A stretch of 61,538 nucleotides of DNA, from contig BFEA01000039.1 in NCBI GenBank assembly GCA_003427395.1, positions 2,292,594 through 2,354,131 of the forward strand, read 5' to 3'. The position numbers and the translations under genes were made by a program. The notes under the pieces were generated by a model. That model was not told the DNA's origin, did not search any database, and saw only the letters and a program-made list of their open reading frames with translations. The DNA comes from Chara braunii (lineage: Eukaryota; Plantae; Charophyceae). The stretch's first letter is position 1, and every line of letters begins with the position of its first letter. This document shows positions 103-21,090 of the stretch, piece by piece.

Positions 103-139
<37 letters not shown>

Positions 140-160
140 CGAATCAATCAATCAATCAAT
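100..160. repeat. (ATCA)n microsatellite
   Basis: Tandem atcaatcaatca run; complementary (GATT)n runs occur at about 13170-13390. Confidence 0.9.
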
Positions 161-469
161 TAAGAAGGAAAGGGAATCCTTAGCGGATGCTGGGCACCCT
201 ACCGTCTCAACCCGAAAACAAGGTACGTACCTTTTTTTTTTTTTTTCTTTTTTTTTTTGGGAAATATTCAGTATTTCATTACAGCGAAAACCTAGGACGA
301 GGCTGGGGACCTCACAATTCAACCCGGAGTTACCCTGGCAGCATCAGCCCGTTTTGCTTACAATCCAAGCTCGCTGACCTACCTCTATTCTAGGTCCATC
401 CCGACTACTGTTTGAAAACTGGGTCCAACATCCCATGCTAAGACCAAAGTCTTTCCAAAAATCAAACCT

Positions 470-2350
470 CGAAGCACCGGGAAAAAGGGGGCCGCCACAC
501 ACACAAAGGCACAAACATACACTCACAGGGATGCACATAAGAACACAGACACACAGAAATACACAGACATGGAGACATAGACACAAACACGCACAAACAG
601 TCGTGTTTACACAACACACACAGACACGCAGACACAGACAAACACACAAACAAAGATACACATAGACGCACACTGGTAGACACACACACAAGAACGCAGG
701 CACACAGACACACACAAACATAAAGACACAGGCTTGTAGTGACAAAAAGTTCCCCCAGAACCAATCACTTTCGCCTGCACCACTCGTGTTTACACACAGA
801 CACACGCACACAAGGACACAGTGAGACACACAGATACACGGACAACGACACACACAACGACAAAGATACGCACAGACACACGCACAAACTCACGGCCACA
901 CACGGACAAAGGCACACACGGACGCACTGACACAGTCTGTGTCTTTGTTTGTATGTCTTTTTGTGCACCGCACAGGAACACAGACTCAGCCCATGTCCGT
1001 GTTTTAATGCGCATGTGTTTATGTGTGTTTGTGTCTGTTTCTGTGCCTATGTATGTCTGTGCACAGTGGCACAGACTAACGCAAGCACGTTCCCAAAATT
1101 GTTATAAGCCTATAACCACTTTCATTTGTAGCAGTCGAGTTCACACACAGACAGACGCACACAAGGACACAGTTAGACACACACAGACAAACACAACCAC
1201 AAACACAACCAAACACACACAGGCACAAACGCACACAACCAGACACACAAGAACACACAGATACACACACACACACACGCACACACACACACACGCAAAC
1301 ACAGGTACATGCACACACAGATACACACACACTCACAGACAGCCACACACACAAACACAGACACACTGACAAACAGACACACAGACACACATAAAGACAA
1401 AGGCCTGAAAGCGGTCCCCAAAGTGTTTAAGGCCTACAAGCACCTTCGCATATTTTTCTGCTCGAGGCCGCCACACACACAAAGGCACAAACATACACTC
1501 ACAGGCACGCACACAAGAACACAAGCACAGAGACATACACAAACATTCAGACATAGACACGCACATACACAAATAGAGACACACACAAAAACACACACAA
1601 AAACACAAGCTTAAAATGCTGAAAAGTTTCCCCAAGAAAATTACAGGCCTATAATCACTGTTAGGCACACACACAAGAACACAGGCACACAGACACACAG
1701 ACACACATAGACATAAAGACACTGGCTTGTATTGTCAAAAAGTTTCCCCATAACCAGTACAGGCATTTAATAACTTTCGCCTAAAGACACAGGCTTGTAT
1801 TGTCAATCAGTTTCCTCATACGCACACAGACACACACAGACACACACAGACATAAAGACATAAAGACACAGGCTTGTATTGTCAATCAGTTTCCCCATAC
1901 GCACACAACCATACACACAAGAACACACAAATACACAAACACACAGACACGCACACACACACACACACGCAAACACAGGTACACATACACACAGACACAC
2001 ACACGCAAAAACAACATTACACACAAATAGAGATACACAGACACACATAAGGACAGAGGCCTGAAAGTGGTCCCAAAAGTGTTTAAGGCCGACAAGCACC
2101 TTTGCCTTGCCTGCCACACACAGAGGCACACATACAGACACAAACAATGACGCGCACACAGGCACAGACGCACACACACGAAGAGAGACACACAGACACG
2201 AAGAGAGAGACACACACAGACACACACACAAAAAGACACCTTTGTCAGTTGTGTTTGCACATAGACACACGCACACAAGGACACAGGGAGACACACACAG
2301 ACACACGAACACTGACACACACACAGACATACACGGGTATAGAGACATAC
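470..2350. repeat. CA-rich complex (degenerate microsatellite-built) repeat array, left arm
   Basis: Degenerate (CA)n blocks interleaved with recurring modules such as gtggtcccaaaagtgtttaaggcc..aagcacctttgccttgcctgccacac and ggcctataatcact; the same modules recur at 8180-12800. Confidence 0.9.
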
Positions 2351-2395
2351 AGGCAAAACAAGCCGGGGTGTTAGGGCCCTGTAACCAGTCTTGCC

Positions 2396-3250
2396 GTGCT
2401 TGACATTTGTTTTGGATGCCTCTTTGCGTGCAGTCCATTCGTGACGATGAAGACATCCCGAGGTGTGAGGGGTGCGAGCAAGGGGAGGAGTGCAAGAACA
2501 ACCAGCACAGTGTTTTCCCGGGAGCAGCCGGCGTGCTCCGGAAGGGTTGTGCAGCAAAGGCAACCACCGGAGCAGAACGCCGTTCAAGACGCATGGGGAG
2601 AGGATGATTTTCCCCAAATGGGAGAAGGAGATAAGGAAGAATATGTTCTAGAAGAAGGAGAGTTCGAGGAAGGAGGAGGCGTAGGAGAGGGAGAGGAAGG
2701 AGAGGGAGAGGAAGGAGAGGGAGAGGAAGCAGAGAAAGAGGAAGAGGAAGGAGGAGGCGAGGGAGAAGAAGATGATGATGAAGAAGAAGAAGAACAAGAA
2801 GAAGAAGAAATAGAGGACGAGGATGGAGGAGAAGAAGATCCAATGGAGGAGGACGACAGTTGGCAGAGAGAGTTCCTTGAGTCGAGGCCTGTTCGCAGCG
2901 ACTTCAAGTACTTCTTTTGGGCCGTGTATGTCGCAGCTGGATTAACTTTTCTTCACGTCGAGAGCACCGGCAACGGTGTCTATCTAGAAATTGGCGAAAT
3001 TTTATTTGCACTGCACGTGATGGAGAAATATCTCATCACGGAGTTGTGGGTCGTTATCAAGGGCAAACTCCCAAAATGTCTGTTGAAGGGGGATAAATTA
3101 ATGCCCATGCAGATGCCCATCCAAAACAGGAAATTGTTGACATTAAATAAGATTGGTTGCAAGGTAAATGCTCTCATCTCCCCTAAAATTCCCACTGCAT
3201 CTCTCTTTGCAGGAAGTTGCAGAGTTGCAAGTTTCACTCCGCTTCTTTGA
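2396..3250 (+). CDS. Hypothetical protein with a Glu/Asp-rich low-complexity tract; possibly the first exon of the downstream ParB-MTase gene
   Basis: 284-aa ORF (likely start ATG 2447, MKTSRG) with an acidic tract at about 2620-2860 followed by a globular-looking segment; possible splice donor AAG|GTAAAT near 3163. Confidence 0.4.
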   Translation: MLDICFGCLFACSPFVTMKTSRGVRGASKGRSARTTSTVFSREQPACSGRVVQQRQPPEQNAVQDAWGEDDFPQMGEGDKEEYVLEEGEFEEGGGVGEGEEGEGEEGEGEEAEKEEEEGGGEGEEDDDEEEEEQEEEEIEDEDGGEEDPMEEDDSWQREFLESRPVRSDFKYFFWAVYVAAGLTFLHVESTGNGVYLEIGEILFALHVMEKYLITELWVVIKGKLPKCLLKGDKLMPMQMPIQNRKLLTLNKIGCKVNALISPKIPTASLFAGSCRVASFTPLL

Positions 3251-3269
3251 AGTCGCAGATCTTCAGTTT

Positions 3270-3537
3270 CAGGCCTATAACTTCCACGGCGTATCCGAGA
3301 GTTATAGGCCTATAACTTCCATGGCGTAACCGAAAGTCATAGGCCTACAACTTCTACGTCGTACCCGAAGTTGCAGGCCTTTAACTTCCACGTCTTGTCC
3401 GCGTCTTACTCGCTTCCGGGGAGTTATAGGCCTATAACTTTCACTGCGTCTTCCTTGCTTCCGGCAAGTTATAGGCCTATAACATTCATTGCGTCTTCCT
3501 CGCTTCCAGAAGTTTGACTCTTTGAGGTTGCAGGCCT
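3270..3537. repeat. Array of AGTTATAGGCCTATAACT-type palindromes (7 AGGCCT cores, initial period about 35 bp)
   Basis: AGGCCT at 3271, 3306, 3341, 3375, 3428, 3473 and 3532; perfect 18-bp palindromes at 3300-3317 and 3422-3439. Confidence 0.9.
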
Positions 3538-3633
3538 GGAATGTGTTACTCACATTTGTGTTGTTCTATTGCACTTGTCGTACGCATGTTGCTCTAAGTG
3601 TGTGTTATAGGCATATAAGTTTCTCTGACACAC

Positions 3634-6550
3634 TTGGTCGACTGTTGTTTTTTTGTTTGCTTCCAATGTGTTGCGCAACCTTCCGTGGAAGGACTTTCTG
3701 ACTTCTTGCGACCAAATTTGGATGTGAAACTTCTTCCTTCTAAGTACGCAGAGCAAGCAGAAAAATCACAAACTCCAACGACGACGACCACGAGGGGTGG
3801 CTCGAAAGCGAGGTCACAACGCCCCAGAGATGTGATTTCTCCTCAAACCATTGTCGGGTCTTCCGGTAGTTTGGAAAGGGGATCGGGCACAAAGATGGTT
3901 CTTGGGAAGATTCGCGGGAAGAAAACAGTCACAGAGGGTCCGCCTCGTCTGGAAGGGCAACGGGAGGGGAAGACGAGGGAAGAGGAAATCCAGGTACCCC
4001 AAGGTTTCGTGCCGAACGAGTGCACGGAAGATTTGATACAAACTTGGGAGGAGTTGAAGAGTTTGAAGGAGAAGAAGCTTTCACACGAGTTTTTTTAATT
4101 GCCAATGAGATGTTTGAAGAGGTCACCCCTAGTGAATGGGAAAAAACCAATGGAGGTGAGAGAGTCGAACGAGGACCATGTGAAGTTCATCATGGACTCC
4201 ATGCTGAAGCAGCCAACTGGAGATCATCTTCCCTTCGTTGGCCTCGTCGACCCTGCCCAGGCCGGGCGCAAAGAAGACGTGAGCTTGATGAAACTGAGAG
4301 CCAGCGACTACGACATTTTTGTGCTTGGTGCTGGCCACAGTCTGGAAGCGAGGGAGCGGTTAGCACGCACGAATCCCGACAACGAGGAGTACCAGTACAA
4401 TATCTGCTATGTTTACGTTGGCCTCACGATCGGTGAGGCGAGGCAGGTTGCCCACAGGCATAACCTTGCGGCGGGTTACCACAGGGACTTGAACTTCATC
4501 GAGAAGCTCAGGTGTTGACGCCAAGTCTTTGAGAACAGAGGGTGCATTAAGTCGCAAGAAGTGAAGCTCGCTTGCCTGAAAGAAGCAGGGATTCTGAATG
4601 AGGCTAAGAAATTGAACGCCCAAGACCCGTTGCTGCAGTATGCTTTCAAGCCCCAAGAGATTTGGAAGCTCATGTGTAAGATCATGAGCATGTGGCAGAA
4701 GGGCGAGGTCAAAGGCCAGAAACTGAAGCTGGTTGCGAGGAGCTTCTTGAAAGCGGACCAGGATCTAGAAACGAGCGAGTTCGAGGGCGCGAAGAAAAGC
4801 CAGCGTGGGAAGAGGCTTGATAGGGCAGCTGCGAAGGAACAAGAAATGACGTTTTTTTATCCTCGGGTGCAACTGCAGGGTAACAGGGTCCGCATGGTTG
4901 TCGAGGACATGCCAGCACAACACTGGATAGTCATGGGTAGTATGGCTCCAGAGAACGCCGTCCCTATCCTCCTTGAGGTCATTGCGAAGCAGATCTCGCT
5001 CAAGGAGATGGAGAAGAAGTTCCAGCTTGTCAAACAAATTGCCTACGTCTGCAAGGCATTCGCAGTAGGGGTGGGTGCTGCTGACTTCAAGAGGGCCAAA
5101 AAGGAGTATCCTCTCCACACGAAGAAAGAGATTTTGGAGAAGTTCGTTGGTGGCATCAGAAGGGGTGAGACGAGTATCCCCGCACTAGATGGCCATATTA
5201 AACGGGCTTTAGAATGAAAGAACAAGGAAAGGAGACTGCAAGCAAAGAAGGTTATTCACGTGTTCCGTTCGAAACCTCTTGTGGGACCGTTCGTCGACTG
5301 GACGGAGGTGACACACGACAACGACTCGGCGGAAGTGAAAATTATNAATGGCGACATGCGCTTGTTGTCGAAGCTGCAGGCAGAAAAGTTGNCGATATCT
5401 CTGGCTATTTTCAACTTCCCTTACGGGTTCGCGCACGAGGGTCACGCATCTGATAATGAGTTGTTTCCAGAGTCGGACGTTNTGGAGGTTCTTCACAATC
5501 TGAAGGACGTTTCCAGTGCCCCGTTGTGGACAGTTGCGGGATTCTNTTCGGTGGACATGCTTCCTTCCATCCGCTCCNCNTTCCGGGAAGTTTGCAATGC
5601 AGGGCAGGAGCTTTTGACGTGGTGCAATCCTAATGTGACAAATCTAGGTGGGCCTCGGCTTGTGAGTGCGACCAAATTCTGCGTGCTGGGCTATTACAGC
5701 GAGACTGGGCAACGCGAGATGGCGCACTACAATTTTGATCCCACTGATATGCGTCACAATTTCCAGCTCTTCAACGTTGTGATGCAGAAGTACCAGCACC
5801 CTGGTGGCGGTGTCCTCTGCCCATACCACAAGCCGTATACTTTGTACTCCTGGCTTGTGAACAAATTCTCTCCCACAGGGGCCTGCGTTCTAGATGGTTT
5901 TTCCGGTTCCCACACAGGCACCATAGCGTGCGTCAAGGCAAATCGGGAATTGCCTTTTGGTGCAGATAAACACCAAGTGCGCTAAGGTAATCGCCACGAG
6001 GCTTCTGACAGACATCGGCGACACACTTGCTCGCGAAACGCCAAAGCGGAAAGAAAAGGTCGCACAAGGCAGCCCGACCTCTAAGTTGTCTGAGGATACG
6101 AAGTCTGCCGAAAATGAACTCGTGCCCGCTGAAGACACGGGCACTCCTGCTGGAGTGGCGGACAGCGTTGAGGCTGTCGTTATCGGGCCGTCAGGTGCGA
6201 GTTTGCCCACTGCCGTGGCAGCTGCCGGCCCGTCCGGTGTGGAGTAAACTGTTACCGGTGCTGAGCCCGCTATCATTGTGCCTCTTCCCGGTGAGGGTAG
6301 ACCTGTGCCTGCTTCCATGCCTGCTCCCAACGTTGTTCCCGAAGTTAGACCAGAGGCTGAGACGCAACCTGCGTCCGGGCTTGTTCAGCAGAGTGTCTTG
6401 AGCCTCGCCATAAGCCAGGAATCGAGGAGGACCACGACTGGCGGCAGGAAGAGGCGCAAACGAAAGGCAGGCGGTGAAGAGGTGTCGAGCCCGCTAGGTG
6501 GGGTAACGATTGGCCTCAAGGCCAACACTCGCTCACGGACTGCGAAGTGA
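3634..6550 (+). pseudogene. ParB/Srx-like domain + helical region + beta-class N6A/N4C DNA methyltransferase fusion, disrupted by stops and one frameshift
   Basis: ORFs 3634, 4099, 4561 and 5260 share one frame, separated by single stops (TAA 4096, TGA 4516, TGA 5215). ParB-like motifs: VRESNEDHVKFIMDSM..PFVGLV..YDIFVLGAGHSLEARERL..ICYVYVGLTIGEARQVAHRHN..DLNFIEK. MTase motifs: IxNGDMRLL..ISLAIFNFPYG (DPPY-like motif IV), then HKPYTLYSWLVNKFSPTGACVLDGFSGSHTGTIACVKANR (motifs X and I). A +1 frameshift near 5946 restores NRNCLLVQINTKCAKVIATRL, and that frame runs through TAA 6245 to 6550. Confidence 0.8.
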
Positions 6551-6574
6551 TTGAGGCCACAATGTATCCTTTGG

Positions 6575-6810
6575 ATATAGGCCTATATGTCATGTGTGGA
6601 CACACACTTTCGATATAGGCCTATATTACATGTGTGACCTCAAACCACACATGCAATATAGGCCTATATTGCATGTGTAGACACGCACTTTCGATATAGG
6701 CCTATATTGTATGTGTGGCCTCAAACCACACATGCAATATAGGCCTATATTGCATGTGTGGACACGCACTTTCTATATAGGCCTATATTGCATGTGTGGC
6801 CTCAAGTCAC
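6575..6810. repeat. Tandem array (81-bp unit, 38+43) of ATATAGGCCTATAT palindromes directly after the MTase gene
   Basis: AGGCCT at 6579, 6617, 6660, 6698, 6741 and 6779; perfect 32-bp (6647-6678) and 36-bp (6726-6761) palindromes. Confidence 0.9.
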
Positions 6811-6849
6811 TTTCGTGTTCTGCCGACTCTCGTCTTCTCCTTCCGCTTG

Positions 6850-7945
6850 TTCTTTTCAAACCACGGATCGCCCGCGATAATGACAGAAGGTCCACGAGCT
6901 GCCGTTTGTTGGCGTCAAATAATGATTTGCTTGGTACATTCCGGTCAAGGAGCCAAAGCAAGATCGAAAACGATCCATGTAGCAAGGATTGCACCTCTCG
7001 CAATTGGTGCGAGAGGAGAAACCAAGCTTTATTCGTTCACGAGTCTTCAGTTAGCATCACATGGTCAAAATGAGGATTCCTGTGGTTTGTGGTCTAGGAG
7101 TTGCTATTTGTTGATGTCGAATAATGATTTGCTTGGTGCGTTTCGGTCAAAGAGTTGAAGCAGGATCGACAACGGTCCATGTACCAAGGATTGCGCCTCT
7201 CGCAATTGGTGCGAGAAGAGAAACCAAGCCTTATTCGTACACGAGCCTCCTCTGGTGAGTGTTGCTTTGCCTGGATCCCTCCCATGATTGATCGTCGCCC
7301 CTACGTCGTCGGAGTGTGTGCTGCTTTGCCTGGATGTCGCTCCCAAGATTGGTTGTCGTCCCTTCATGGTTGGAGTTGTGTGGTTTGGCACATGACTTTG
7401 TTTTCTGCAGAATTGTTATTGTGTAGAGTAGGCTAGCTTTTTGTTTTTTAGGTCGTGGAAGTGGGAACCAGGCGCACTCGGTTCGTGGTTCAGACCGCAG
7501 TAGGTCGACAATTTTGAGAGTGTCATCACTACTGGGAATTATGTGTTCTGTCGTGCATTGTAGCCATTTAGAGGAACGAGGCCTGGGGAGGTCGACCCAG
7601 TGGTACTCACCACAGGTGTGGTAGTTTTCGGGGACAGGAGGTACTTTAGTTTGCCTTTCCCATGATTGGTCGTCGTTCCTTCGTCGTTGGAGTTGTGTGG
7701 TTTGACACATGGCTTTGTTTTTTGCAGAATTTTTATTGCGTGGAGTAGGCTAGCTCTTTCCTTTTTAGGTCGTGGAAGTGGGAACCAGGCGCACTCGGTT
7801 CGTGGGTCAGACCGCAATAGGTCGACAATTTTGAGAGTGTCATCATTACTGAGAACCTTGTGTTCCGTTGTACATTGTAGGCATTTCGAGGAACGAGGCC
7901 TGGGGAGGTCCACCCAGGGGCACTCGGCACAAGTGTGGTAGGTTT
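6850..7945. repeat. Two local tandem duplications (about 200-bp and about 310-bp units)
   Basis: About 6900-7045 resembles 7095-7250 (aataatgatttgcttggt..cgcaattggtgcgag..gaaaccaagc); about 7345-7625 resembles 7660-7945. Confidence 0.8.
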
Positions 7946-8179
7946 GGTTACATTGTGGTACTTTAGTTTACACGTGGAATGACTTAGTGGAGCATTTATG
8001 GTTTACTTCTTTTGTCGGGTTTGGTTCAGTTCTTTTGTTGGACTTTTCTTTTTTTCTAAAGGTTAATTTTTATAACCCTCTATTTTTTTTTCTAAAGGTT
8101 GTTTCTGATAACCCTCTCATTTTCATTCGTGAGTTCTTGTTCACTTACCTTTGGGTGGACGACCTCTCTCTCTCTCTCT

Positions 8180-8679
8180 CTGTGCCAGCCGAGTTTACAG
8201 ACAAACACACGCACACAAGGACACAGTTAGACACACACAGACAGACACAACCACACACACACAACCAAACGCACACAGGCACAGACGCACACAACCACAC
8301 ACACGAGAATGCACAGATACACACACACAGACACGAACACAGGTGCTCACAAACACATACACACACACACTCACAGACACCACCACGCACACACAGACAG
8401 CCGCACACATAGATATAGACACACACACAAACACGCACACAAACACACATAAAGACATGGGCCTGCAGGTGCTCCCAAAAGTGTTGTAGGTCTGCAAGCA
8501 GTTTTGCCTTGCCTGCCACACACGCACAGAGGCACACACAGACACAAACAACCACGCGCACACAGACACACACAAACACAGACGCACACTCAAAGACTCA
8601 CACACAAGAACACAGGCACACAGACACACACACAGACACGCAAGCACACACACACACAAAAAAAGAGATACACACACAG

Positions 8680-8714
<35 letters not shown>

Positions 8715-9808
8715 GACACAGGCTTGAAGTTTTAAAAAGTATTCCCAGAACCGTTTCAGGCTGATTTGTTTGTTATCTCAAAAAAACATGTTTACAGTCC
8801 TGCAAGATGTATGACACGATAAACGTATTCGGGGGGTTTTCGAACGCCCAAACATGTTCTTGAACATATTCTCTCAAACCAGAGCGAACATATTGTTTTC
8901 TACTGTTTTTTTGTTTTTTCTCTTAATAAATTTTGAACTGGTGTACCTCCCTGGCAAAAGTTAATTGCACTTTTACTTTAAACAACCACGCACGTGGTTA
9001 GATGCATCAGCCTCAAGTACGCAAACACAGAGACACAGATACACGGACACAGACACACACAACAACACACGCACACGGACACACACACAGACACATACAC
9101 ACACAGATACATACAACGACACACGCACACAGACACATACGGACACACTGACACAGTCCGTGTCTGTGTTTGTATGTTTTTTGTGTACCACACACGAACA
9201 TAGACTCAGCCCGTGTCCATGTTTTCATGTGCATGTGTTTATGTGTGTTTGTGTTTATTTCCGTGTGTGTGTCTTTGAGTGTGTACACTAGCATAGACTA
9301 ACACAAGCACACACACACAAAGTAACATTCTCTTGAACTTTTATAGGCCTATAATCACTTTCGTATGTGCCAGTCGAGTTTACACACAGACACACACACA
9401 GAAGGACACAGTTAGACACACATAGACAGACACAACCACACACACACAACCAAACACACAAAGGCACAGACGCATACAACCACACACACAAGAACAGACA
9501 GACACACGCACACATATGTACACATACACACAGCCAGACACACACAACTACGCACACACAGACAACCACACACACAAACACAGACATACAAACAAACACA
9601 TAAAGATAGAGGCCTGGAAGTGGTCCCAAAAGTGTTTAAGGCCTACAAGCACCTTTGCCTTGCCTGCCACACACACAGAGGCACACACACAGACACAAAC
9701 AACCATGCCCACACAAACACAGACGCACACACAAACATACGCATTTAATCACTTTCGCTTGTGCCAGTCGTGTTTACACACAGACAGACGCATGCAACAA
9801 CACAGTTA

Positions 9809-9881
<73 letters not shown>

Positions 9882-12119
9882 AGACACAGACACACACACA
9901 TACACACGGATAAATTGGCACATACACACACAAGCACACACAGACAAAGTCACAAACACACACAACCACACATCGAAAAGTGTTCCCAAAACTGTTAAAG
10001 GCCAAGAAGCACCTTTGCCCGAGGTTGCCCACGTTCATTGTGTGCGCATGCATTTAATCCATGCACATGCACACACATGATTGGTTGATTGGTTGGTTGG
10101 TTTTTTGATTGATTGATCCACGCACATGCACACACGCACAAACTTGATTGGTTGATTGGTTGATTGATTGGTTGGTTGCATGCCTGCAATCAATCAATCA
10201 ATCGATCAACCAATCAGTCCAAAAAAAGGTCCTACAAAATTGCTTTAGAGAGTCTCTAAAATCTTGAAAATAGTTGAAGTCTTGTAAATAATGTTTGTTT
10301 TAGACACAGACACACATACAGTGTCACACAAACAGAGATACACACAGACACACACACACACACATCTAGACACAGGCTTGAAGTTCTGAAAACTATTCCC
10401 AAAACCGTTTCAGGCTCATTTGTTTGTTATCTCAAAAAAACATGTCTATAGTCCTGCAAGATGTATGACACGATAAACGTATTCGGGGTTTTTTCAAACG
10501 TTCAAACATGTTCTCAAACATATTCTCTCAAACCTGAGCGAACATATTGTTTTCTACTGTTTTTTTGTTTTTTTTTAAATTAATTTTGAACTGGTGTACC
10601 TCCCTGGCAAAAGTTGATTGTATTCTTACTTTAAATAACAAATATTTTTTGCTAAGGGTATTTTTGTTAACTCAAAATTTATTTATAGTCCTGAAAATTA
10701 GTTTTCGCAAATCTTGGTTTTCACCTAACTGCTAAACAGGGCCGCCTGCGGCACACTTAGTGCCAATGGACTGTGATAGCCCTTTGGATACCGCTGATTG
10801 GTATTAACGGGGTCTATGACCAACACGGGTGTGAGTGTGAGCGCGAGTGGGTTGTGCGTGGTGTGTGGGAGAGTGTTGGTCATAGCATCTGCTGCTACTT
10901 GATGAAGGGTGGGGGACGATGAGAAAGGGCGACACAGCTACTGGCAGATGTAGGTCAGCCTTTGCTGCTACTCGATGAAGGGTGGGGGACGATGAGAAAG
11001 GGAGGCACAACTACTGGCAGGTCTCGGTCTTTGTGTTAGGGACGATGAGCTAACGACAAGTGTTTGTGGTCTGTTACAAAGAATACCAAAAGTGTGGGGA
11101 CCAACTACTCGAGGTCTTCGCCCTTACAAAGAAAGGAAAACAAGAAGGAAAAAAAGAACTCACCAGATGCACACACGCACACATACGCATGTGCACATAC
11201 ACACACATGATTGGTTGATTGGTTGATTGATGGATTGGTTAGATGCACCAGCCTCAAGTACGCAAACACAGACACGCAGACACAGACACGCACACAAACA
11301 GAGGTACACAAAGACGCACACTGGGAGTCACACACGCAAGAATGCAGGCACACAGACACACACAGACACACAGACATAAAGACACAAGCTTGAAGTGTCG
11401 AAGAATTTCCCCATAACTATTATAGATCTTTAATTACTTTCGCCTGCGCCAGTCGTGTTCGTACACAGACACACGCACACAAGGACACAATTAGACACAC
11501 ACAGACACACGGACACGGACACACACAACGACACACGCACACAGACACACACATGGACATGCACACAGACACAAACACACACAGACACATTCAATGACAC
11601 ACGCACACAGACACATACGGACACACTGACACAGTCTGTATCTATGTTTGTATGCTTTTTGTGTACCACACACGAACACAGACTCAGCCCATGTCTGTTT
11701 TTTCATGTGCATGTGTTTCTGTGTGTTTGTGTTTGTGTCTGTTTCCGTGTGTGTGTCTTTGAGTGTGTACACTGGTACAGACTAACACAAGCACACACAC
11801 ACAAAGTAATATTCCCCGTGTGTGTGTCTTTGAGTGTGTACACTGGTACAAACTAACACAAACACACACACACAAAGTAACATTCCCCAGAACTGTTATA
11901 GGCCTATAATCATTTTCGTCTGTGCCAGTCGAGTTTACACACAGACACACGCACAGAAGGACGTAGTTAGACACACACAGACAGACACAACCACACACAC
12001 ACAACCAAACACATACAGGCACAGACGCACACAACCACACAGATACACACATACACACACGCGCACAGATACACACACACATACACACACACACAGATAC
12101 ACACACACACACACAGACA

Positions 12120-12211
<92 letters not shown>

Positions 12212-12800
12212 CACAGGTAAACATACACACAGACAGACACACACAACCACGCACATACAAACAGCCACACACACATACAAACACATAAAGACAGAGGTCT
12301 GAAAGTGGTCCCAAAAGTGTTTAAGGCCTGCAAGCACCTTTGCCTTGCCTGCCACACACACACACAGGCACACACACAAACACAAACAACCACGCACACA
12401 CAGGCAGACGAATTTAATCACTTTCGCCTGCGCCAGTCGTGTTTACACACAGACGGACGCATGCAAGAACACAGTTAGACACACAGACACACACAAACAC
12501 ACGCATACATTGGCACAGACACACGCAAGCACACATAGACAAAGTCACAGACACACACAACCACACATCGAAAAGTGTTCCCAAAACTGTTAAAGGCCAA
12601 GAAGCACCGTTGTTCGAGGTTGCCTGTGTGCATGCATTCAATCCATGCACATGCACACACATGATTGGTTGATTGGTTGGTTGGTTGATTGATTGATTGA
12701 TCCACGCACATGCACACACGCACACACGCACACACTTGATTGGTTGATTGGTTGATTGATTGGTTGTTTGCATGTCTGCAATCATTCAACCAACCAAGCA
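8180..12800. repeat. CA-rich complex repeat array, right arm, in the same orientation as the left arm
   Basis: Same modules as 470-2350, plus pure (CA)n runs; internal duplication of about 8715-8975 at 10365-10630; non-CA insert at about 10740-11160 with a roughly 73-bp tandem duplication. Confidence 0.9.
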
Positions 12801-13045
12801 CACACTTGGACAGAAGTTGCTCAGGTAAGCTATTGAAATTTGGAAAGAGGATAAAAGTTCCTCTCCGCAGGTCTGTGCCTGTAAGCTAAGCTGGCTGATA
12901 CTATCAGATACCCCGGGTTGAATTGTGAGGTCCCCGCGCTCGATCTTTTGTTGGGAATGATATGAATGCTTTGAGTGAAAAAAAAACAAAAAAAATGAAA
13001 CTACAGGGAGTGCGTGTCTGTGTTTGTGTGAGACACACACACAGC

Positions 13046-13092
<47 letters not shown>

Positions 13093-13439
13093 TTGACTCA
13101 CATACATTCAATCCACGCACATGCACACACGCACAGACACGCTAATGCACATACAGATACACATCATTGGTTAATTGGTTAATTGATTGATTGATTGATT
13201 AATTGTCAATCAATCAATCAAGAGATTAACCAAACAGTCCATCAAACGGTCCTAGTGAATTCTAGCATAGAGGCCTATAAATTCAAAATTGGTTGCTAAT
13301 GGACATACAGACGCACATGATTGGTTGATTGGTTGATTGGTTGATTGATTGATTGATTGATTGATTGCATGTCAATCAATCAATCAATCTTTCAACCAAT
13401 CAGTCCAGCAAACGGTCCTTGTGAATTCTGGCTTATAGG

Positions 13440-13800
13440 ACTATAACTTCAAAATTGGTTTAGAGAGTCTCTTAAATCTTTGAAATAGTTTAATCCTTGT
13501 AAATAATCTTTGCACAAACAACTTTTATCTCACAGACATCTTGAATTCTTAGTCAAAACGCAAGTTCAAAATGAAACAGAGAGAGAGAGAAAGAGAGAGA
13601 GCGGGAGAGAGAGAGAGTAGGACCATAACTTCAAAATTGGTTTAGAGAGTTTCTTAAATCTTGGAAATAGTAAAATCCTTGTAAATAATCTTTGCACAAA
13701 CAATTTTTATCTCACGGACATCTTGAATTCTTAGTCAAAACGTAAGTTCAAAATGAAACAGAGAGAGAGAGAGAAAGAGAGAGAGTGGGGCAGAGAGAGA
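13440..13800. repeat. About 183-bp tandem duplication with (GA)n tail
   Basis: ataacttcaaattggtttagagag...aagttcaaaatgaaacagagagag occurs twice. Confidence 0.85.
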
Positions 13801-14257
13801 GTAAAGATCTATGTGGAGTGTTGTGACCCTCATACATTCGAAATGTTTGTTGTCCATGCACATCGACACACACACATGTGTGACTGATTGATTGATTGAT
13901 TGGTTAGATGTCAATCAACCAATACATTGATTGGTTGGTGGGCGGGTGCACATCATCCCTCCTCTCTCTAAACTCTCTAACCGCACACACACACAATCCA
14001 CATATCACACACACACAAATACATAATCCACATGACATTGTCATACACACGGACACAGACACACACACTTTCCCTCTCTCTTTCTCCATTTTCTCGTGGC
14101 TTTCTCGTCGCTTTCTTTCTCCCTCTCTCTCTCTCCCTCTATCTATCTATCTTTGTCCCTATCTCTCATCGCCTTTTCAATCCCCACGCCGACCCCGATC
14201 GATCAATCAATCGACTGGATAAATTAATAATTCCATTGATCATTCAATCAATCAATC

Positions 14258-14329
<72 letters not shown>

Positions 14330-15304
14330 NNNNNNNNNNNNNNNNNNNNNNNNNNNNNNNNNNNNNNNNNNNNNNNNNNNNNNNNNNNNNNNNNNNNNNN
14401 NNNNNNNNNNNNNNNNNNNNNNNNNNNNNNNNNNNNNNNNNNNNNNNNNNNNNNNNNNNNNNNNNNNNNNNNNNNNNNNNNNNNNNNNNNNNNNNNNNNN
14501 NNNNNNNNNNNNNNNNNNNNNNNNNNNNNNNNNNNNNNNNNNNNNNNNNNNNNNNNNNNNNNNNNNNNNNNNNNNNNNNNNNNNNNNNNNNNNNNNNNNN
14601 NNNNNNNNNNNNNNNNNNNNNNNNNNNNNNNNNNNNNNNNNNNNNNNNNNNNNNNNNNNNNNNNNNNNNNNNNNNNNNNNNNNNNNNNNNNNNNNNNNNN
14701 NNNNNNNNNNNNNNNNNNNNNNNNNNNNNNNNNNNNNNNNNNNNNNNNNNNNNNNNNNNNNNNNNNNNNNNNNNNNNNNNNNNNNNNNNNNNNNNNNNNN
14801 NNNNNNNNNNNNNNNNNNNNNNNNNNNNNNNNNNNNNNNNNNNNNNNNNNNNNNNNNNNNNNNNNNNNNNNNNNNNNNNNNNNNNNNNNNNNNNNNNNNN
14901 NNNNNNNNNNNNNNNNNNNNNNNNNNNNNNNNNNNNNNNNNNNNNNNNNNNNNNNNNNNNNNNNNNNNNNNNNNNNNNNNNNNNNNNNNNNNNNNNNNNN
15001 NNNNNNNNNNNNNNNNNNNNNNNNNNNNNNNNNNNNNNNNNNNNNNNNNNNNNNNNNNNNNNNNNNNNNNNNNNNNNNNNNNNNNNNNNNNNNNNNNNNN
15101 NNNNNNNNNNNNNNNNNNNNNNNNNNNNNNNNNNNNNNNNNNNNNNNNNNNNNNNNNNNNNNNNNNNNNNNNNNNNNNNNNNNNNNNNNNNNNNNNNNNN
15201 NNNNNNNNNNNNNNNNNNNNNNNNNNNNNNNNNNNNNNNNNNNNNNNNNNNNNNNNNNNNNNNNNNNNNNNNNNNNNNNNNNNNNNNNNNNNNNNNNNNN
15301 NNNN

Positions 15305-15398
<94 letters not shown>

Positions 15399-15975
15399 TT
15401 AGACAGAGAGAGAGAGAGACAATAAAACAAAGTGAAAACCAAAGTCGAGATTCAATCAACAGAAATAAGTAAGTGGTTGCAATTATTATTATTATTATAC
15501 ACATTCTGGCTCTCTCTCTCGCTCTCTCTCTGTCTCAATCTCTAACCCTCTCGGGCCTCTCCCTCCGTCTCTCTCCTGTACATGCTAATCTCTTTTTCTC
15601 TCGTTGTCCCTCTCTCAATTATTGTACACACGCGCGGCCTATTCGGAAACACTACTCATGGCCATGAGAAAGAGAGAGGGAGACACGTGGCATTGCCACG
15701 TACTTGCACTTGCGCTGGATATCTAGAGTGAACGAGAGAAAGATAGATAGAGAGAGAGGGAGAGACAGGGAGACACGTGACATTCCCGTATAGTTGCATG
15801 TGTGCGGCCTCTTATGTGTCGTCCGTGCACCTGCCACGTGGTCCATTCGGTCCTTAATCGGGCTATTCTCCTCGATGTCGTCCGCACAACTGCCACGAGG
15901 TGCACTCGCCATCCTTACACTTCCCACATGGATGCCACTTGCCAGCTGCCACGCCGTGCACTACGTCCTTAGCCT

Positions 15976-16013
<38 letters not shown>

Positions 16014-16937
16014 CGTTGCAAGGAACCTTTTCCGGCGAGCGATCCGGATTCTGACGTGGACGGTCTCATGTGTCGGTTTGCGTGCTTGCCACGTGCCAAA
16101 AACACCCCACTTGTGGGTTACTCTTTCTCGCTCTCATTCTCTTTGTCTTTCTTTCTCTCTCTCTCTCTTTGTATCTCCCTCTCTCTCTCTCGCGCCTCGG
16201 CATCCTTGGTGTCTTCTGTTGATGCGCCGGTTGATGTGCAGGCGGCTCTCTCCTTTCCCTGTTCCATCTTCTGGCGTTCATCCTCCTCATCTAACTGCCG
16301 GATGTAGAGGATCAGATCCTCCAAGTCTTTCTTCTCCTTCTCCATGAATTTCCTGGTCTCAGGAGATACCTTCCTCCTTCTCTTTCGGCTCTCCTTGCGG
16401 CGCGGACGTGCATGCTCTTCCACCCACCATTCGTCGCAAGATGATGATGACAAGTCCGCATCATCGGTCCTCCTCCTCTCCCAAGATTCAAACGTATGGG
16501 CCATGGGGGGGGGNGAGAGAGAGAGGACCCGACAACGAGCCTGACAAGTCCGGATCACACAGAAGTGCCACGTGGCACTATTCTCCCATGGAGACAACCA
16601 AGACAATCAGCAGGGAACAATATCGACGTCAATCTCAGGTAAGTAACCNGCTCCTNACTCTNCCACAGATCCTGATCCTCCTCCTTGTCNCAACTAGTCA
16701 CCTCATGTACACAGCGTGGCCAGTGTCACGTTAACAATAGAGACAGGTCGCATGCGCAACTCCCTCAAATCTCTGGCAGAGCGCAACTCTCTCTCTCGCG
16801 CGCGTACAAGTGCACTAGCACTTCGGAATCCACACTCTCATGCGAATGAGCATCTGCCGAAATGGGAGGCTGACCAGTCTTTTATGATGCTGGACTGGAC
16901 TTCCCCGGCCAGCCTCGAACTCAAATGTGTTTGGCGG

Positions 16938-17190
16938 CCTGGGACCGCATGCCCACTGTCTGTTGCTGCAAAGTGTAGTCCCAGTATCTTTTTCATGGTA
17001 GCCTGGGACCGAAGCCCAGTGCTTGTTGCTGCGAAGTGTAGTCCCAGTACCTTTCCCATGGTGGTCTGGGACCGCATGCCCAACGCTTGTTGCTGCAAAG
17101 TGTAGTCCCAATACCTTTCGCATGGTAGCCTGGGACCGCATGCCCACTGCCTGTTGCTGCAAAGTATAGTCCCAGTACCTTCCCACGGTC
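16938..17190. repeat. Minisatellite, about 62-bp unit, about 4 copies
   Basis: cctgggaccgcatgcccactg..tgttgctgcaaagtgtagtcccagtacc repeated. Confidence 0.9.
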
Positions 17191-17885
17191 TGCTGCTGTT
17201 GTAGCCTTTCGGGCCTTCCTTTTGGACTTCTGGTCTGACTCGAGACCTGACCTCTGGGACTGGCACTAATTGGGCCTGCGACCTTTAACTCTGGGACTGA
17301 CACTAACTGGGCCTGCGACCTTTGACTATTTGTTGAATGGACGTGACCCCTGCTGCTGTGGCCTATCGGGCCTGCCTTTTCGACTTCTGGTCTGACTCAG
17401 CACTTGACCCCTGGGACTGGGGCTAACTCTTGAGTCGGACCAGAAGTCCAAAAGGCAGGCCCGAAAGGCCACAGTAGCAGGGGTAACTGAACAGACGTGA
17501 CCTCTGCTGCTGTAGCCTTTCGGGCCTACCTTTTGGACTTCTGGTCTGACTCAAGACTTGACCTCTGGGACTGAGAGTAAGTCTTGAGTCAGACCAGAAG
17601 TCCAAAAGGCAGGCCCAAAAGGCCGCAGTAGCAGGGGTCACGTCTGTTCAGCAGACCTGATTCGGACCAGAAGTCCTAAAGCCAGGCCCGAAAGGCAGCC
17701 GCAGGGGTCACGTCTGTTCATACCCCTTCTGCTGTGGCCTTTCCGGCCCACCTTTTGGACTTCTGGTCTGGCTCAAGACTTGACCTCTGGGACTGAGAGT
17801 AAGTCTTGAGTCAGACCAGAAGTCCAAAAGCCAGGCCCGAAAGCCCACAGTAGCAGGGGTCACGTCTGTTCAGCAGACTTGAGTT
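17190..17885. repeat. Fold-back array of alternating direct and inverted roughly 80-bp units; further copies at 18865-19135
   Basis: ggcctttcgggcctgccttttggacttctggtctgactc alternates with its reverse complement gagtcagaccagaagtccaaaaggcaggcccgaaaggcc. Confidence 0.9.
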
Positions 17886-18364: not shown

Positions 18365-19889
18365 ATGACGATATATATATATATATATATATATCCTAAA
18401 GCCTTGGGCACTGGGCCCTTAAAAAAAGAAAGGAAAAAAAAACAACAACAACACCATCTTACAATTTGATTTTATTTTTTTTTTCGCTACTAGGAAGTAA
18501 GGGAATAACAAATCATGCGAAGTTGGGAAATAATATAATGCTCCCAAGGTTACTTCCGGGTTGAATTGTGAGGCCCCGACCTCAAGTTTCATTTGGTAAA
18601 ATAAAGAAAACATAATAATAATAATACTTAACCAAGGCATTTGATTCACAATAAAAAATGTATCTTTTTAAAACAAAGAATATTCAAGAAAAGAATATTC
18701 TTAAAAATCTATGATTCATTCAAAATTTTGACAAATATGTCATTTTAATTTTATCATATTTATGTAATTTTAATTTTATGTATTGCATATGTTTATTGAT
18801 TTGATTTATCCATTTTTATTTATTCCAATTCAGTAATTTATAAATTTCAAATTTGTAAACATCGCAGGCGAGTCAGACCAGAAGTCCAAAAGGCAGGCCC
18901 GAAAGGTCACAACAGAAGCTGAACAGACGTGACCCCTTTTGCTGTGGCCTTTCGGGCCTGCCTTTTGGACTTCTGGTCTGACTCGCCTGCGACGTTACCT
19001 TTGGGACTGAGACCAACTGGGCCTGCGACCTTCGACTCTGCCGAACAGACGTGACCCCTGCTGCAGTGGCCTTTCTAGCCTGCCTTTTGGAACTTAGACT
19101 CAAGACTTGACCTCAGTCAGAGCAGAAGTCCAAGACCTTTGAGTGTTTACCGACACTAGGTAGTCACTTCAATCTATCTTCGATACTAATGAAATGTGAG
19201 CATGTTACTACAGTCTTCCCCCCAATACAACGCACAATCATTAGAGTTGTATTTAGACCGAAAGACACCGCAAATACAGCCACAATGACCGTACGTTGTA
19301 TTCGGGGGAACACTGTACGGCTCGAACGTCTAATACAAATAATATTAAATTCAGAAATAACCTAGGTTACCAGCCCGGACGTTCGGGACCCTTTTTTATT
19401 CCGGCTTGTCCGATCAGACAACTTCCCCGGTTGTCCGAGCGGGGCCCAGTGTCCGGTGTGGTGAAAAATTCTCAGGTGGGTCCAACAGGGTTTTTGGCCC
19501 TGGGGTGACGTTTTATGGCCTTCGTAGTACCCCCCTTTCACCTGACCAATTTTAGTGATGCCAGCAGGACCTCCGAAAACAAGACACAAAAAGGTCTGGT
19601 CTAGGCTGTCAGATCTAAGAGATCTACGGCCTAGATCAGGCCAAATCCAAATTTGAAATCATCCCTCCTCCTCCTCCTTCCAGTATCCTTCTTTTTCTTC
19701 TTCCCCCTCCTCGTCCGAAAGGTCCCCTGCAAATATTTAGCAGAGCTTCCGTGCTTCGGGAAGGATGCCCATTGGATTGCTGCAAAACGCCCAGCAGGGC
19801 AGTAATATATCCTGGATTGAAGTGGATTCTGATTCAGGTGTGTGTTCCAAGAGTTATGGGCGACGAGATTACTGCAAACACTACAGCAG

Positions 19890-21090
19890 CTGTCTCGTTT
19901 TTTTTTTTCCCTTTTCTTACGTGCAGTGGCCCTAAGGGCCTGTCTCCACTCATCAGCACTTGCAGAAAAGAAAAACGGATGGCTTGTATGATTCTAGTTT
20001 CTAGGAGAAGATTCATTTCAGTTTTCCACGTACAGTAGGTGTCTCTTTTTTTTGTTTTTCCTTTTCTTACGTGCAGTGGCCCTAAGGGCCTNTACAGTAG
20101 GTGTCTCTTTTTTTTGTTTTTCCTTTTCTTACGTGCAGTGGCCCTAAGGGCCTCGCTCCACTCATCAGCACTTGCAGAAAAGAAAAGCGTATGGCCTGTA
20201 TGGATCTAGTTTCTAGGAGAAGATTCATTCTAGTTTTGCACATACAGTAGCGGTCTCATTTTTTTATTTTTTTTTAATGGTCTTCCAGAGGGCAGCTTCG
20301 AGTGGGTTGTAGTCTCCTGTCAATTCCTTCCCAGGAGACGGTCTCCCTTNCAGAATGCGAAGCTTTTCCCAGGCAGCCTCACCCATTGGCACGGCCCCCT
20401 TCCCAACAAGATTCTCCCAGACTAAGCCTGCAGAATCAGGGGTCATAATAAGAGTATAACCCTCCGAAGAAGCCCTGCCCCTGATGCGATGGTCACTGGC
20501 TCACCAAACAACTCAAAATGCATGTTGGTTCCATAGGGTGTCCCCACAACTGCCCCTCCTTTCATGTCCTCCAAAATCTCCCCGCTCTTAGGCTGTCTCG
20601 TTTTTTAGTTTTTTCTTTTCTTACTTGCGTGCAGTGGCCGTAAGGGTCTGGCTCCACTCATCAGCACTTGCAAGAAAGAAAATCGTATGGCCGGTATGGA
20701 TCCAGTTTCTAGGAGAAGATTCATTCTAGTTTTGCACATACAGTAGGTGTCTCGTTTTTTGTTTTTCCTTATCTTACGTGCAGTGGTCCTAAGGGGCTCC
20801 ACTCATCAGCACTTGCAGAAAAGAAAACGGATGGCTTGTATAGTTCCAGTATCTAGGAAAAGATTCCTTCTAGTTTTGCACATACGGTAGCTATCTCATT
20901 TTTTAGTTTTTCCTTTTCTTACTTGCGTGCAGTGGCCGTAATGGCCTGGCTCCACTCATCAGCACTTGCAGAAAAGAAAAACGTATGGCCTGTNGGCCTG
21001 GCTCCACTCATCAGCACTTGCAGAAAAGAAAAACGTATGGCCTGTATGGATCCAGTTTCTAGGAGAAGATTCATTCTAGTTTTGCACATT
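19890..21090. repeat. Tandem array of roughly 150-bp units inside the hAT-like element
   Basis: cttacgtgcagtggccctaagggcc..ctccactcatcagcacttgcagaaaagaaaacg..gtttctaggagaagattcatt repeated, some copies partial, interrupted by 20276-20592. Confidence 0.9.
20276..20592 (-). pseudogene. Captured fragment of a YgfZ/COG0354 (CAF17/IBA57-like, plastid-type) folate-binding protein gene
   Basis: PKSGEILEDMKGGAVVGTPYGTNMHFELFGEPVTIASGAG / (frameshift) SEGYTLIMTPDSAGLVWENLVGKGAVPMGEAAWEKLRILxGRPSPGKELTGDYNPLEAALWKTI matches the plant COG0354 region just before the KGCY signature. Confidence 0.8.

What the first reader, a model, noticed from the sequence alone, without database searches (positions are those of the whole stretch)
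3634..6550. Prokaryote/phage-type ParB + beta-class amino-methyltransferase fusion gene in a eukaryotic repeat landscape
Seen: four same-frame ORFs plus one +1 frameshift reconstruct a single protein of roughly 950 aa. It has a ParB/Srx-like domain (about 4150-4510), a helical linker, and an MTase with the catalytic motif (NFPYG) before the SAM-binding motif (VLDGFSGS), which is the beta permutation. Known: ParB-MTase fusions are typical of phages and prokaryotic mobile elements, and the few characterised eukaryotic beta-class N4C enzymes (bdelloid N4CMT, Marchantia DN4MT1) are of bacterial origin. Inference: this is a mobile-element-borne 4mC/6mA writer family in an algal or plant genome. This copy is dead, and its stops are each one C>T or G>A transition from sense codons, so intact paralogues may exist elsewhere.
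Basis: partly seen in the sequence, partly recalled or inferred. Interest (0 to 1): 0.9.

Follow-up and report, generated by a model that had tools for sequence, protein, structure and literature searches.

The report
Plant transposon carrying bacterial-type DNA methylase
This is a dead copy, in a stonewort alga, of a gene that a family of cut-and-paste transposons carries through algae, liverworts and ferns. The gene fuses a bacterial chromosome-partition (ParB) fold to a bacterial-type DNA methyltransferase, and each transposon lineage has its own palindromic DNA tags, which suggests the element chemically marks itself.

Summary
Window 3679-6550 is a decayed ParB-fold + helical + beta-class amino-methyltransferase gene with four in-frame stops and one +1 frameshift. 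Its nearest kin are at least 15 Chara braunii gene models. An uninterrupted 929-codon frame exists in Chara, and there are relatives in Riccia, Adiantum and Ginkgo.

Corrections: NFPY is decay of the family motif D-x-P-Y, which points to 6mA rather than 4mC. One stop is a transversion. An upstream acidic ORF is probably exon 1. Phage relatives are only 23-30% identical.

New: the gene is cargo of a DNA transposon with terminal inverted repeats. A DUF7869 DDD-type (Sola-like) transposase lies beside it in seven loci, and one 8.9-kb metagenome contig is a near-complete element. Each lineage carries its own 12-20 bp palindrome, almost only in introns and spacers (71 of 73 copies). The window's palindrome also heads units of the CA-rich flanks, which a second Chara copy shares.

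Most likely mechanism (inferred, untested): the protein binds these parS-like sites and methylates its own element to resist silencing, as VANC proteins do by demethylation. No activity, binding or transposase was shown for the window copy. No description was found in the literature searched.

The parts
114..16417 (+). Minimum extent of the repeated unit (transposon-derived element). Collinear with a second Chara copy; true ends not found, and no transposase lies inside the window.
   Evidence: blastn against L005: 86% over 2265-6724 and 70-89% across the flanks, up to the end of L005; no transposase HMM hit in the window
478..2300 (.). CA-rich array of diverged units, two of them headed by a near-perfect palindrome (1103, 1642)
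2447..3163 (+). Probable exon 1: very acidic (E/D-rich) stretch plus a small conserved domain; the same kind of ORF precedes the MTase in L004, L005, L006 and L017
   Evidence: ORF; 78% to L005 and 31% to L006; the L005 gene model removes exactly the homologous 566-nt intron
3164..3678 (+). Probable phase-0 intron holding the upstream palindrome array (copies at 3268, 3303, 3338, 3425, 3470, 3606). Donor GT intact; the acceptor reads AA where L005 has AG.
3679..4044 (+). Low-complexity basic linker at the start of probable exon 2
4045..4480 (+). ParB/Srx-fold domain. GGxH(S/T)xxA stands where ParB has GxxRxxA (4327-4350), and HN where ParB has EN. Stop codon at 4096.
   Evidence: family profile hit at 4053-4719, E 6e-91; fold of the intact homologue matches Noc/ParB/Srx
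4481..4720 (+). Four-helix module placed like the ParB helix-turn-helix DNA-binding domain; its third helix varies between lineages. Stop codon at 4516.
   Evidence: (alignments to ParB/Noc span 190-220 columns, those to Srx about 113)
4721..5330 (+). Disordered basic segment and conserved helical linker. Stop codon at 5215.
5331..6016 (+). Beta-class N6/N4 DNA methyltransferase domain: motif IV at 5413-5424 (NFPY here, D-x-P-Y in the family), YxKP near 5824, SAM motif at 5896-5916, +1 frameshift at 5944-5946
6017..6550 (+). Ala/Pro/Glu-rich tail ending in a basic cluster; in-frame stop at 6245; native stop at 6548-6550
   Evidence: (P0007)
6576..6787 (.). Downstream array of six perfect copies of the 12-bp palindrome TATAGGCCTATA
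   Evidence: 17 matches in the window at up to 1 mismatch, against 0.01 expected
8150..13460 (.). CA-rich arrays of diverged units, with palindrome copies at 9342, 11897, 13268 and 13434

Best explanation
What it is (shown by homology, about 0.9): a decayed copy of an accessory gene carried by a family of cut-and-paste DNA transposons in streptophytes. The element has terminal inverted repeats and a DUF7869, DDD-triad, Sola-like transposase. The accessory protein reads acidic region - ParB/Srx fold - HTH-like helices - helical linker - beta-class amino-methyltransferase.

How it most likely works (inferred, about 0.45):
(1) The ParB-HTH part binds as a dimer to the element's own palindromes, which behave like parS sites and sit in introns and spacers along the element.
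(2) This tethers a methyltransferase with little specificity of its own, which writes an exocyclic mark on the element. 6mA is more likely than 4mC (about 3 to 1, from the D in motif IV).
(3) The mark and the acidic region keep the element expressed or mobile in hosts that silence transposons with 5mC.
(4) Protein and palindrome drift together, so each lineage marks only its own copies.
The window copy no longer encodes a working protein.
For: Transposase gene adjacent in L004, L007 (Riccia), L008 (Adiantum), L009, L011, L012 and L015, and 8 kb away in Chara L018. L004 is bounded by 28-bp, 96% inverted repeats. The transposase has DGM-D, LDN and GHTH-x-x-x-D. Purifying selection on the source genes: dN/dS 0.28 (window vs L005), 0.22 (vs L003), 0.08 (L006 vs L001). 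Uninterrupted Chara frame at L006:35701-38487. Folds. Eight or more different palindromes, each confined to its own clade. 71 of 73 copies lie outside coding matches, although 43-76% of the tested DNA is coding; control DNA lacks such families. Precedent for TE-encoded self-targeting with lineage-specific non-coding motif arrays: VANDAL/VANC (PMC5735166).
Against: No biochemical or methylome evidence. The arginine of the ParB CTP-binding motif is absent, so clamp loading is uncertain. Motif IV usually lacks the first proline. Motif classes follow the protein tree, but shared descent alone would give that; L009 and L010 have similar candidate recognition helices yet different palindromes. In L004 and L007 the palindrome half-site partly resembles terminal sub-repeats, which favours the transposase as binder. 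No transposase or element ends were found in the window or in seven other Chara loci within the 10-kb flanks. TE-borne DAM enzymes were inactive when expressed in E. coli (bioRxiv 2026.05.21.726589).
Confidence: 0.5

Rival explanations
1. Same transposon and same cargo gene, but the palindromes are bound by the transposase (or its zinc-binding N-terminus) as a self-regulator. The methyltransferase acts untargeted, or on excised ends or insertion sites.
For: Transposases can act as sequence-specific regulators of their own copies (bioRxiv 2026.08.24.746577, abstract). In L004 the terminal sub-repeat and the internal half-site are similar. Palindromes also lie in the transposase intron of L004 and L007.
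Against: The full palindromes are internal, not at the ends, and are densest right beside the MTase gene. Twofold-symmetric sites fit a ParB-type HTH dimer. They persist and diversify in Chara subfamilies where no transposase was found nearby.
Confidence: 0.22
2. The methyltransferase domain is not a DNA writer in vivo (inactive, a reader, or acting on RNA). The protein works as a sequence-specific anti-silencing or activator protein through its acidic region, like VANC.
For: Motif IV is D-x-P-Y with a variable second residue, and some members have DxPH, DxPR or DxPC. Related TE-borne adenine methyltransferases gave no activity in E. coli. 6mA is reported lost from major multicellular lineages.
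Against: D, P, Y, the YQKP motif and the SAM-binding glycines are kept from Chara to ferns and liverworts under low dN/dS. The model superposes on active DNA MTases.
Confidence: 0.15
4. A domesticated host gene family spread by segmental duplication; the transposase neighbours are incidental.
For: The window and L005 share more than 16 kb including microsatellite-rich flanks. Most Chara copies show no transposase within 10 kb.
Against: The same transposase family neighbours the gene in four lineages and in metagenomes. Most copies are broken. Flanks differ between subfamilies. L004 has terminal inverted repeats.
Confidence: 0.04
5. Bacterial, phage or giant-virus DNA: a contaminant, a misassembly or a recent insertion.
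For: The domain order matches phage ParB-MTase genes near terminases.
Against: 91% identity to another Chara scaffold with shared flanks; introns; no relatives found in viral or prokaryotic genome collections; phage kin below 30% identity; separate eukaryotic clade.
Confidence: 0.01

Closest known systems
Phage ParB-beta-MTase genes of ParB-terminase loci (e.g. Vibrio phage 1.213.O gp71, Streptococcus phage Javan69; PMC4738411)
   Same: ParB-fold domain N-terminal to a beta-class D-motif methyltransferase; the MTase domains align (probability 97.7)
   Different: Here a 230-residue helical insert and a probable acidic exon are added; the ParB parts do not align by sequence; there is no terminase; the gene has introns and rides a eukaryotic DNA transposon
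VANDAL transposons and VANC anti-silencing proteins (PMC5735166)
   Same: Plant DNA transposon with an accessory protein; lineage-specific short motifs in non-coding regions that spread as tandem repeats
   Different: VANC induces loss of 5mC and is not a methyltransferase; VANDALs are Mutator-like (own knowledge). Here the motifs are palindromes and the accessory protein is a prokaryote-type writer with a ParB fold.
DAM-carrying DIRS and LTR retrotransposons (bioRxiv 10.64898/2026.05.21.726589) and DNMT retrotransposons (PMC5890265)
   Same: Transposon-borne DNA methyltransferase of prokaryotic type, proposed to mark its own copies
   Different: Those are retroelements with NPP-type DAM or C5 enzymes. 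This is a cut-and-paste element with a permuted beta enzyme, a ParB fold and internal target-like arrays, in lineages said to have lost host 6mA.
Bdelloid N4CMT (PMC8885841) and Marchantia DN4MT1 (bioRxiv 2021.02.12.428880)
   Same: Beta-class amino-MTase of bacterial ancestry in a multicellular eukaryote
   Different: They have SPPY, make 4mC and are host genes (with a chromodomain, or no extra domain). This family has D-x-P-Y, a ParB fold and is mobile.
Eukaryotic N6A-MTase clades of Iyer, Zhang and Aravind (PMC4738411): haptophyte clade 6 from ParB-Tls loci; chlorophyte-type Dam with a ParB-type HTH
   Same: Eukaryotic amino-MTases traced to phage ParB loci, one with a ParB-type HTH
   Different: Those are unpermuted group 1 or group 2 enzymes in haptophytes, chlorophytes and chytrids. 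No permuted ParB fusion in streptophyte transposons appears in the passages read; the supplement was not available.
Sola superfamily DNA transposons (Sola2 sequences in the supplement of PMC3627910)
   Same: Terminal inverted repeats, CxxC...H before the first catalytic aspartate, DDD-type triad
   Different: The first-aspartate context differs from those Sola2 proteins; the target-site duplication could not be fixed; no Sola element with this cargo was found in the literature searched

Membership tests
Beta-class N6/N4 DNA methyltransferases (PF01555) | Catalytic motif IV lies before the SAM-binding motif I | tested here: met
   5413-5424 before 5896-5916; same order in all family rows
Beta-class N6/N4 DNA methyltransferases (PF01555) | Profile score above the Pfam gathering cut-off, and a matching fold | tested here: met
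   Intact homologues score 39.9 and 29.7 bits against 26.7; the broken window piece scores 19.4; Foldseek E 2e-11 to CcrM
Beta-class N6/N4 DNA methyltransferases (PF01555) | SAM-dependent methylation of adenine N6 or cytosine N4 in DNA | not testable with these tools
   Needs an assay; the window copy is broken and has altered motifs IV and I
Eukaryotic N4C MTases (N4CMT, DN4MT1) | SPPY catalytic motif | tested here: not met
   D-x-P-Y in the family; S in none of 42 rows
ParB/Srx superfamily | ParB/Srx N-terminal fold | tested here: met
   Model at pLDDT 81; the top 50 PDB hits are Noc, ParB, KorB, PadC, Srx, SbnI and other ParB-like proteins. Tested on an intact homologue whose domain is 53% identical to the window piece.
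ParB CTPase clamps | Arginine patch GxxR and the EN motif for CTP binding and hydrolysis | tested here: not met
   The family has GGxH(S/T)xxA and HN; the canonical motifs are from own knowledge
ParB CTPase clamps | HTH domain that binds a palindromic parS site | tested here: inconclusive
   A four-helix module lies in the right place and structural alignments run through it, but with high rmsd; palindromes are present, binding not shown
Phage ParB-terminase MTase loci | Neighbouring terminase genes in a phage genome | tested here: not met
   Neighbours are a eukaryotic transposase and an acidic exon; no hit in viral contigs
Sola superfamily DNA transposons | DDD-type transposase | tested here: met
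   DGM-D, LDN and GHTH-x-x-x-D in five loci; Pfam DUF7869 E 3e-50. Not present in the window itself.
Sola superfamily DNA transposons | Terminal inverted repeats | tested here: inconclusive
   Met in L004 (28 bp, 96%); only degenerate in L007; not found for the window copy
Sola superfamily DNA transposons | 4-bp AT-rich target-site duplication (AWWT for Sola2, PMC3627910) | tested here: inconclusive
   ATAT flanks both repeats of L004, but the inverted match continues beyond it to the contig start
Sola superfamily DNA transposons | Phylogenetic placement with reference Sola1/2/3 transposases | not testable with these tools
   No reference sequences available by id; the defining papers were not held
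VANDAL/VANC anti-silencing systems | Lineage-specific motifs in non-coding regions of the element, often in tandem arrays | tested here: met
VANDAL/VANC anti-silencing systems | Mutator-type transposase and VANC homology | tested here: not met
   The transposase is DUF7869; the accessory protein matches only N6_N4_Mtase in Pfam
VANDAL/VANC anti-silencing systems | The accessory protein binds the motifs and changes methylation of its own element | not testable with these tools
   Needs binding and methylome data
DAM-carrying retrotransposons | NPP-type DAM domain linked to reverse transcriptase | tested here: not met
   Permuted D-x-P-Y enzyme linked to a DNA transposase; the retroelements nearby appear to be separate insertions

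The most novel reading that the evidence does not exclude
A eukaryotic transposon family runs a bacterial-style ParB/parS read-and-write system: a nucleotide-gated ParB module loads on element-specific palindromes, spreads, and deposits 6mA (or 4mC) along its own copies. This would give algae, liverworts, ferns and gymnosperms a transposon-private epigenetic mark whose target sequence is reprogrammed lineage by lineage.
Probability: 0.3. Interest if true: 0.93.

Novelty: new variant of a known kind. Interest (0 to 1): 0.78.

Why it matters
Transposon-borne methyltransferases were known mainly from retroelements and virus-resident Mariners, and plant anti-silencing mainly from VANC-type proteins. 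This family joins the two ideas in a cut-and-paste element that spans streptophytes, and it brings a ParB fold into a plant nuclear setting.

It makes a disputed question testable at known addresses: whether real 6mA or 4mC exists in multicellular plants, who writes it and where. The prediction is a mark confined to these elements and centred on named palindromes.

If binding specificity resides in a short variable module, the natural series of protein and palindrome pairs is also a ready test set for sequence-targeted DNA marking. The window copy itself is only a fossil.

Tried and rejected
- Pfam, PHROGs, PDB-sequence, tblastn and profile-profile tests for ParB all failed; only structure prediction showed the fold.
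- Two homologue searches with full-length queries hit the 8000-candidate limit and returned 2-3 proteins, so they say nothing about copy number.
- Viral and prokaryotic contig scans found no relative (short-pattern method).
- No transposase trace in six-frame searches of the window or of L001, L002, L003, L005, L006, L016, L017 and L019.
- A 40-bp inverted match between 306-344 and 18538-18577 was tested as a terminal repeat and rejected: it is a dispersed poly-T-flanked repeat that is also at 12932 and in other loci.
- Terminal repeats were not resolved in L007 or L008.
- Transposase and MTase identities correlate over five loci (r 0.86), but one pair drives this and three MTases were stand-ins from close relatives, so it is not counted as co-evolution.
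- N4CMT and DN4MT1 could not be put in the tree because no sequence reference was on hand. Rows shorter than 150 residues were left out (L018).
- The Sola-defining papers, the final Cell paper on DN4MT1 and the Iyer supplement were not held.
Folding used an intact natural homologue, and scripts read breaks as X.
Full report
OBSERVATION. The frame that starts at 3634 is interrupted by TAA 4096, TGA 4516 and TGA 5215, and the next frame carries TAA 6245 and TGA 6548. Alignment to four paralogous loci shows a single extra base at 5944-5946, which explains the frame change and makes the stop at 5983 a by-product. The stops at 4516 and 5215 are Trp codons in paralogues, 6245 is Gln and 4096 is Tyr, so three of the four are transitions. 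The end at 6548 is shared with L003 and L005. The window's NFPY is DFPY in L003 and L005 (a G-to-A change in a CG context), and GSHTG is GSGTG in all four paralogues.

SOURCE. The MTase piece finds Chara braunii proteins at 72-82% identity. A search of 1.8 billion representatives gave 70 hits. Those looked up are Chara (14 named gene models over, plus L018), Ginkgo, Adiantum nelumboides, Riccia sorocarpa and unnamed metagenome or run assemblies. The window is 91% identical over the gene to scaffold BFEA01000396.1 (L005) and collinear with it from 114 to 16417, CA-rich flanks included. That it comes from Chara, probably C. braunii, is an inference; it is not human. Contamination or misassembly is excluded. 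Source genes were under purifying selection: dN/dS is 0.28 against L005, 0.22 against L003 and 0.08 between two other copies. An uninterrupted 929-codon frame with DLPY and GFSGSGTG exists in Chara at L006:35701-38487.

PROTEIN. I folded the intact metagenome homologue P0011 rather than a repaired window copy. The C-terminal domain matches the beta-class enzymes CcrM, M.BceJIV, M1.HpyAVI, MboIIA and RsrI first, then N4CMT and PvuII. By profile the order is similar: M1.HpyAVI E 2e-12, N4CMT 5e-5. Motif IV is D-x-P-Y across the family and never S. Since SPPY marks most 4mC enzymes and DPPY most 6mA enzymes (PMC8885841), 6mA is the better guess. The N-terminal 236 residues, 53% identical to the window piece where they overlap, match Noc, ParB, KorB, PadC and sulfiredoxin and viral ParB proteins. 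Alignments to ParB and Noc extend through the helices that follow, which sit where ParB has its HTH domain; rmsd values are high, so this part is tentative. The ParB arginine patch is replaced by GGxH(S/T), so CTP-clamp behaviour cannot be assumed. The acidic ORF at 2447-3163 is probably exon 1: the annotated model on L005 removes 566 nt, exactly the homologous GT-AG interval, and two other Chara models join acidic and ParB parts. The acceptor reads AA in the window and in L003, so this junction is a model, not a fact. The joined spliced model was not built or searched.

CARRIER. Contig L004 (JGI metagenome, 8.9 kb) holds an intact gene, the acidic ORF and a spliced DUF7869 gene between 28-bp inverted repeats. 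The DUF7869 protein has a Cys-rich N-terminus and a DGM-D / LDN / GHTH-x-x-x-D triad, which I read as a Sola-like cut-and-paste transposase; superfamily membership could not be tested. Homologous transposase genes lie beside the MTase in Riccia (L007), Adiantum (L008) and four soil-metagenome contigs (L009, L011, L012, L015), and 8 kb away in Chara L018, 65% identical to that of L004. In the window and seven other Chara loci no transposase lies within the DNA on hand, and the ends of the window's element were not found. This subfamily is either non-autonomous or much longer than the view allows; the shared unit is at least 16 kb.

ORIGIN. In a maximum-likelihood tree of 50 MTase domains, the 42 family rows and the 8 phage rows fall on opposite sides of a branch with 100/99 support, and the window sits in a Chara clade with L005 and L003. 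Phage and plasmid relatives are 23-31% identical. Phage ParB-MTase genes beside terminases have the same domain order, and their MTase aligns with probability 97.7, but their ParB does not align. A phage-type ancestor is plausible but old; the sampling is too thin to name a donor.

PALINDROMES. The window has 17 matches to TATAGGCCTATA at up to one mismatch, against 0.01 expected. They lie in two arrays that bracket the gene and at the head of several units of the CA-rich repeats. Other lineages have other palindromes in the same kinds of places:
- TATAG-GA-CTATA in L001 and one L006 copy.
- TATAG-AA-CTATA in L017.
- CGATTACGTAATCG in L016, L018 and L019.
- An ACCGATA-based form in L004.
- CATGCG-N-CGCATG inside longer arms in Riccia.
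- GGATTCTAGAATCC in Adiantum.
- CGAGAC-NN-GTCTCG in L010, L012 and L013.
- A CCGAT-N5-ATCGG form in L009.
Each class stays within a clade of the protein tree. Of 73 copies in ten loci, 71 fall outside coding matches. The other 39 kb of the window and four unrelated flanks have no palindrome family of three or more copies. These arrays are real and belong to the elements. What binds them is not shown.

MECHANISM. Shown: domain content, linkage to a transposase, selection on the source genes, and lineage-specific non-coding palindromes. Inferred: that the ParB-HTH module binds the palindromes as ParB binds parS, that the tethered enzyme writes 6mA on its own element, and that this, with the acidic region, counters host 5mC silencing. 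The closest working precedent is VANDAL/VANC, where a transposon protein binds lineage-specific non-coding motifs that evolve as tandem repeats (PMC5735166). The main rival is that the transposase binds these sites; partial likeness between terminal sub-repeats and half-sites in L004 and L007 keeps it open. A non-catalytic role and a 4mC product are further rivals. TE-borne DAM enzymes showed no activity in E. coli, a caution for any assay.

KNOWN SYSTEMS AND NOVELTY. It belongs to the beta-class MTases and to the ParB/Srx fold superfamily. It is not a member of the N4CMT/DN4MT1 group, of phage ParB-terminase loci, of VANDAL/VANC or of DAM retrotransposons, each of which fails on a defining feature. 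Nine literature searches and the passages read in the 2015 survey (PMC4738411), the 2018 DNMT paper (PMC5890265) and the 2026 DAM preprint gave no description of this family. Subscription papers and Repbase could not be checked, so a prior entry cannot be excluded.

VERDICT. A real, previously undescribed variant of transposon-borne epigenetic writers with a specific and testable self-targeting anatomy, seen here as a pseudogene. Interest 0.78.

Noticed in passing
window 30195-38611 and 41626-45328: Decayed Ty3/gypsy retroelements (gag, protease, RT, RNase H, integrase zinc finger), unrelated to the finding.
   Followed up: partly
window 181-390, 12880-12990, 18538-18577: Short dispersed repeat flanked by poly-T, also in L005, L006 and L017; looks like a SINE or a LINE tail, not a terminal repeat.
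   Followed up: partly
window 21906-22211: Three copies of a variant palindrome (TATAG-GG-CTATA type) far from the gene; may belong to another lineage of the same element family next to the assembly gap.
   Followed up: no
window 16932-17884, 19880-21090, 24005-24301: Three further tandem or inverted arrays with units of 54-222 bp, of unknown origin.
   Followed up: no
proteins P0041, P0054, P0055, P0069, P0073: Deep-branching members of the same MTase clade from unnamed assemblies end in a Cys/His-rich, PHD-like finger, which suggests histone-reading versions in other eukaryotes.
   Followed up: no
L018 9564-14460 against L016 200-13385: The MTase segment of L018 appears inverted relative to its transposase and palindrome array when compared with L016, where a gypsy element splits the same spacer; a LEA-like gene lies beside the breakpoint.
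   Followed up: partly
L004 20-66 and 8810-8871; L007 3475-3526 and 13996-14119: Terminal sub-repeats share part of the half-site of the internal palindrome in both elements; unexplained.
   Followed up: partly
L006 10001-12843, 35701-38487, 44250-46310: Two full copies from different subfamilies and fragments of a third lie within 40 kb, followed by a 101-bp tandem array; the Chara annotation fuses two copies into one 1825-residue model.
   Followed up: partly
L009, L011, L012, L015 against L004, L007, L008: Gene order differs: the transposase converges on the MTase in the soil-metagenome group and diverges from it in the others.
   Followed up: no
L001 near 9850: A second decayed copy also reads N at the first position of motif IV, apparently independently.
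   Followed up: no
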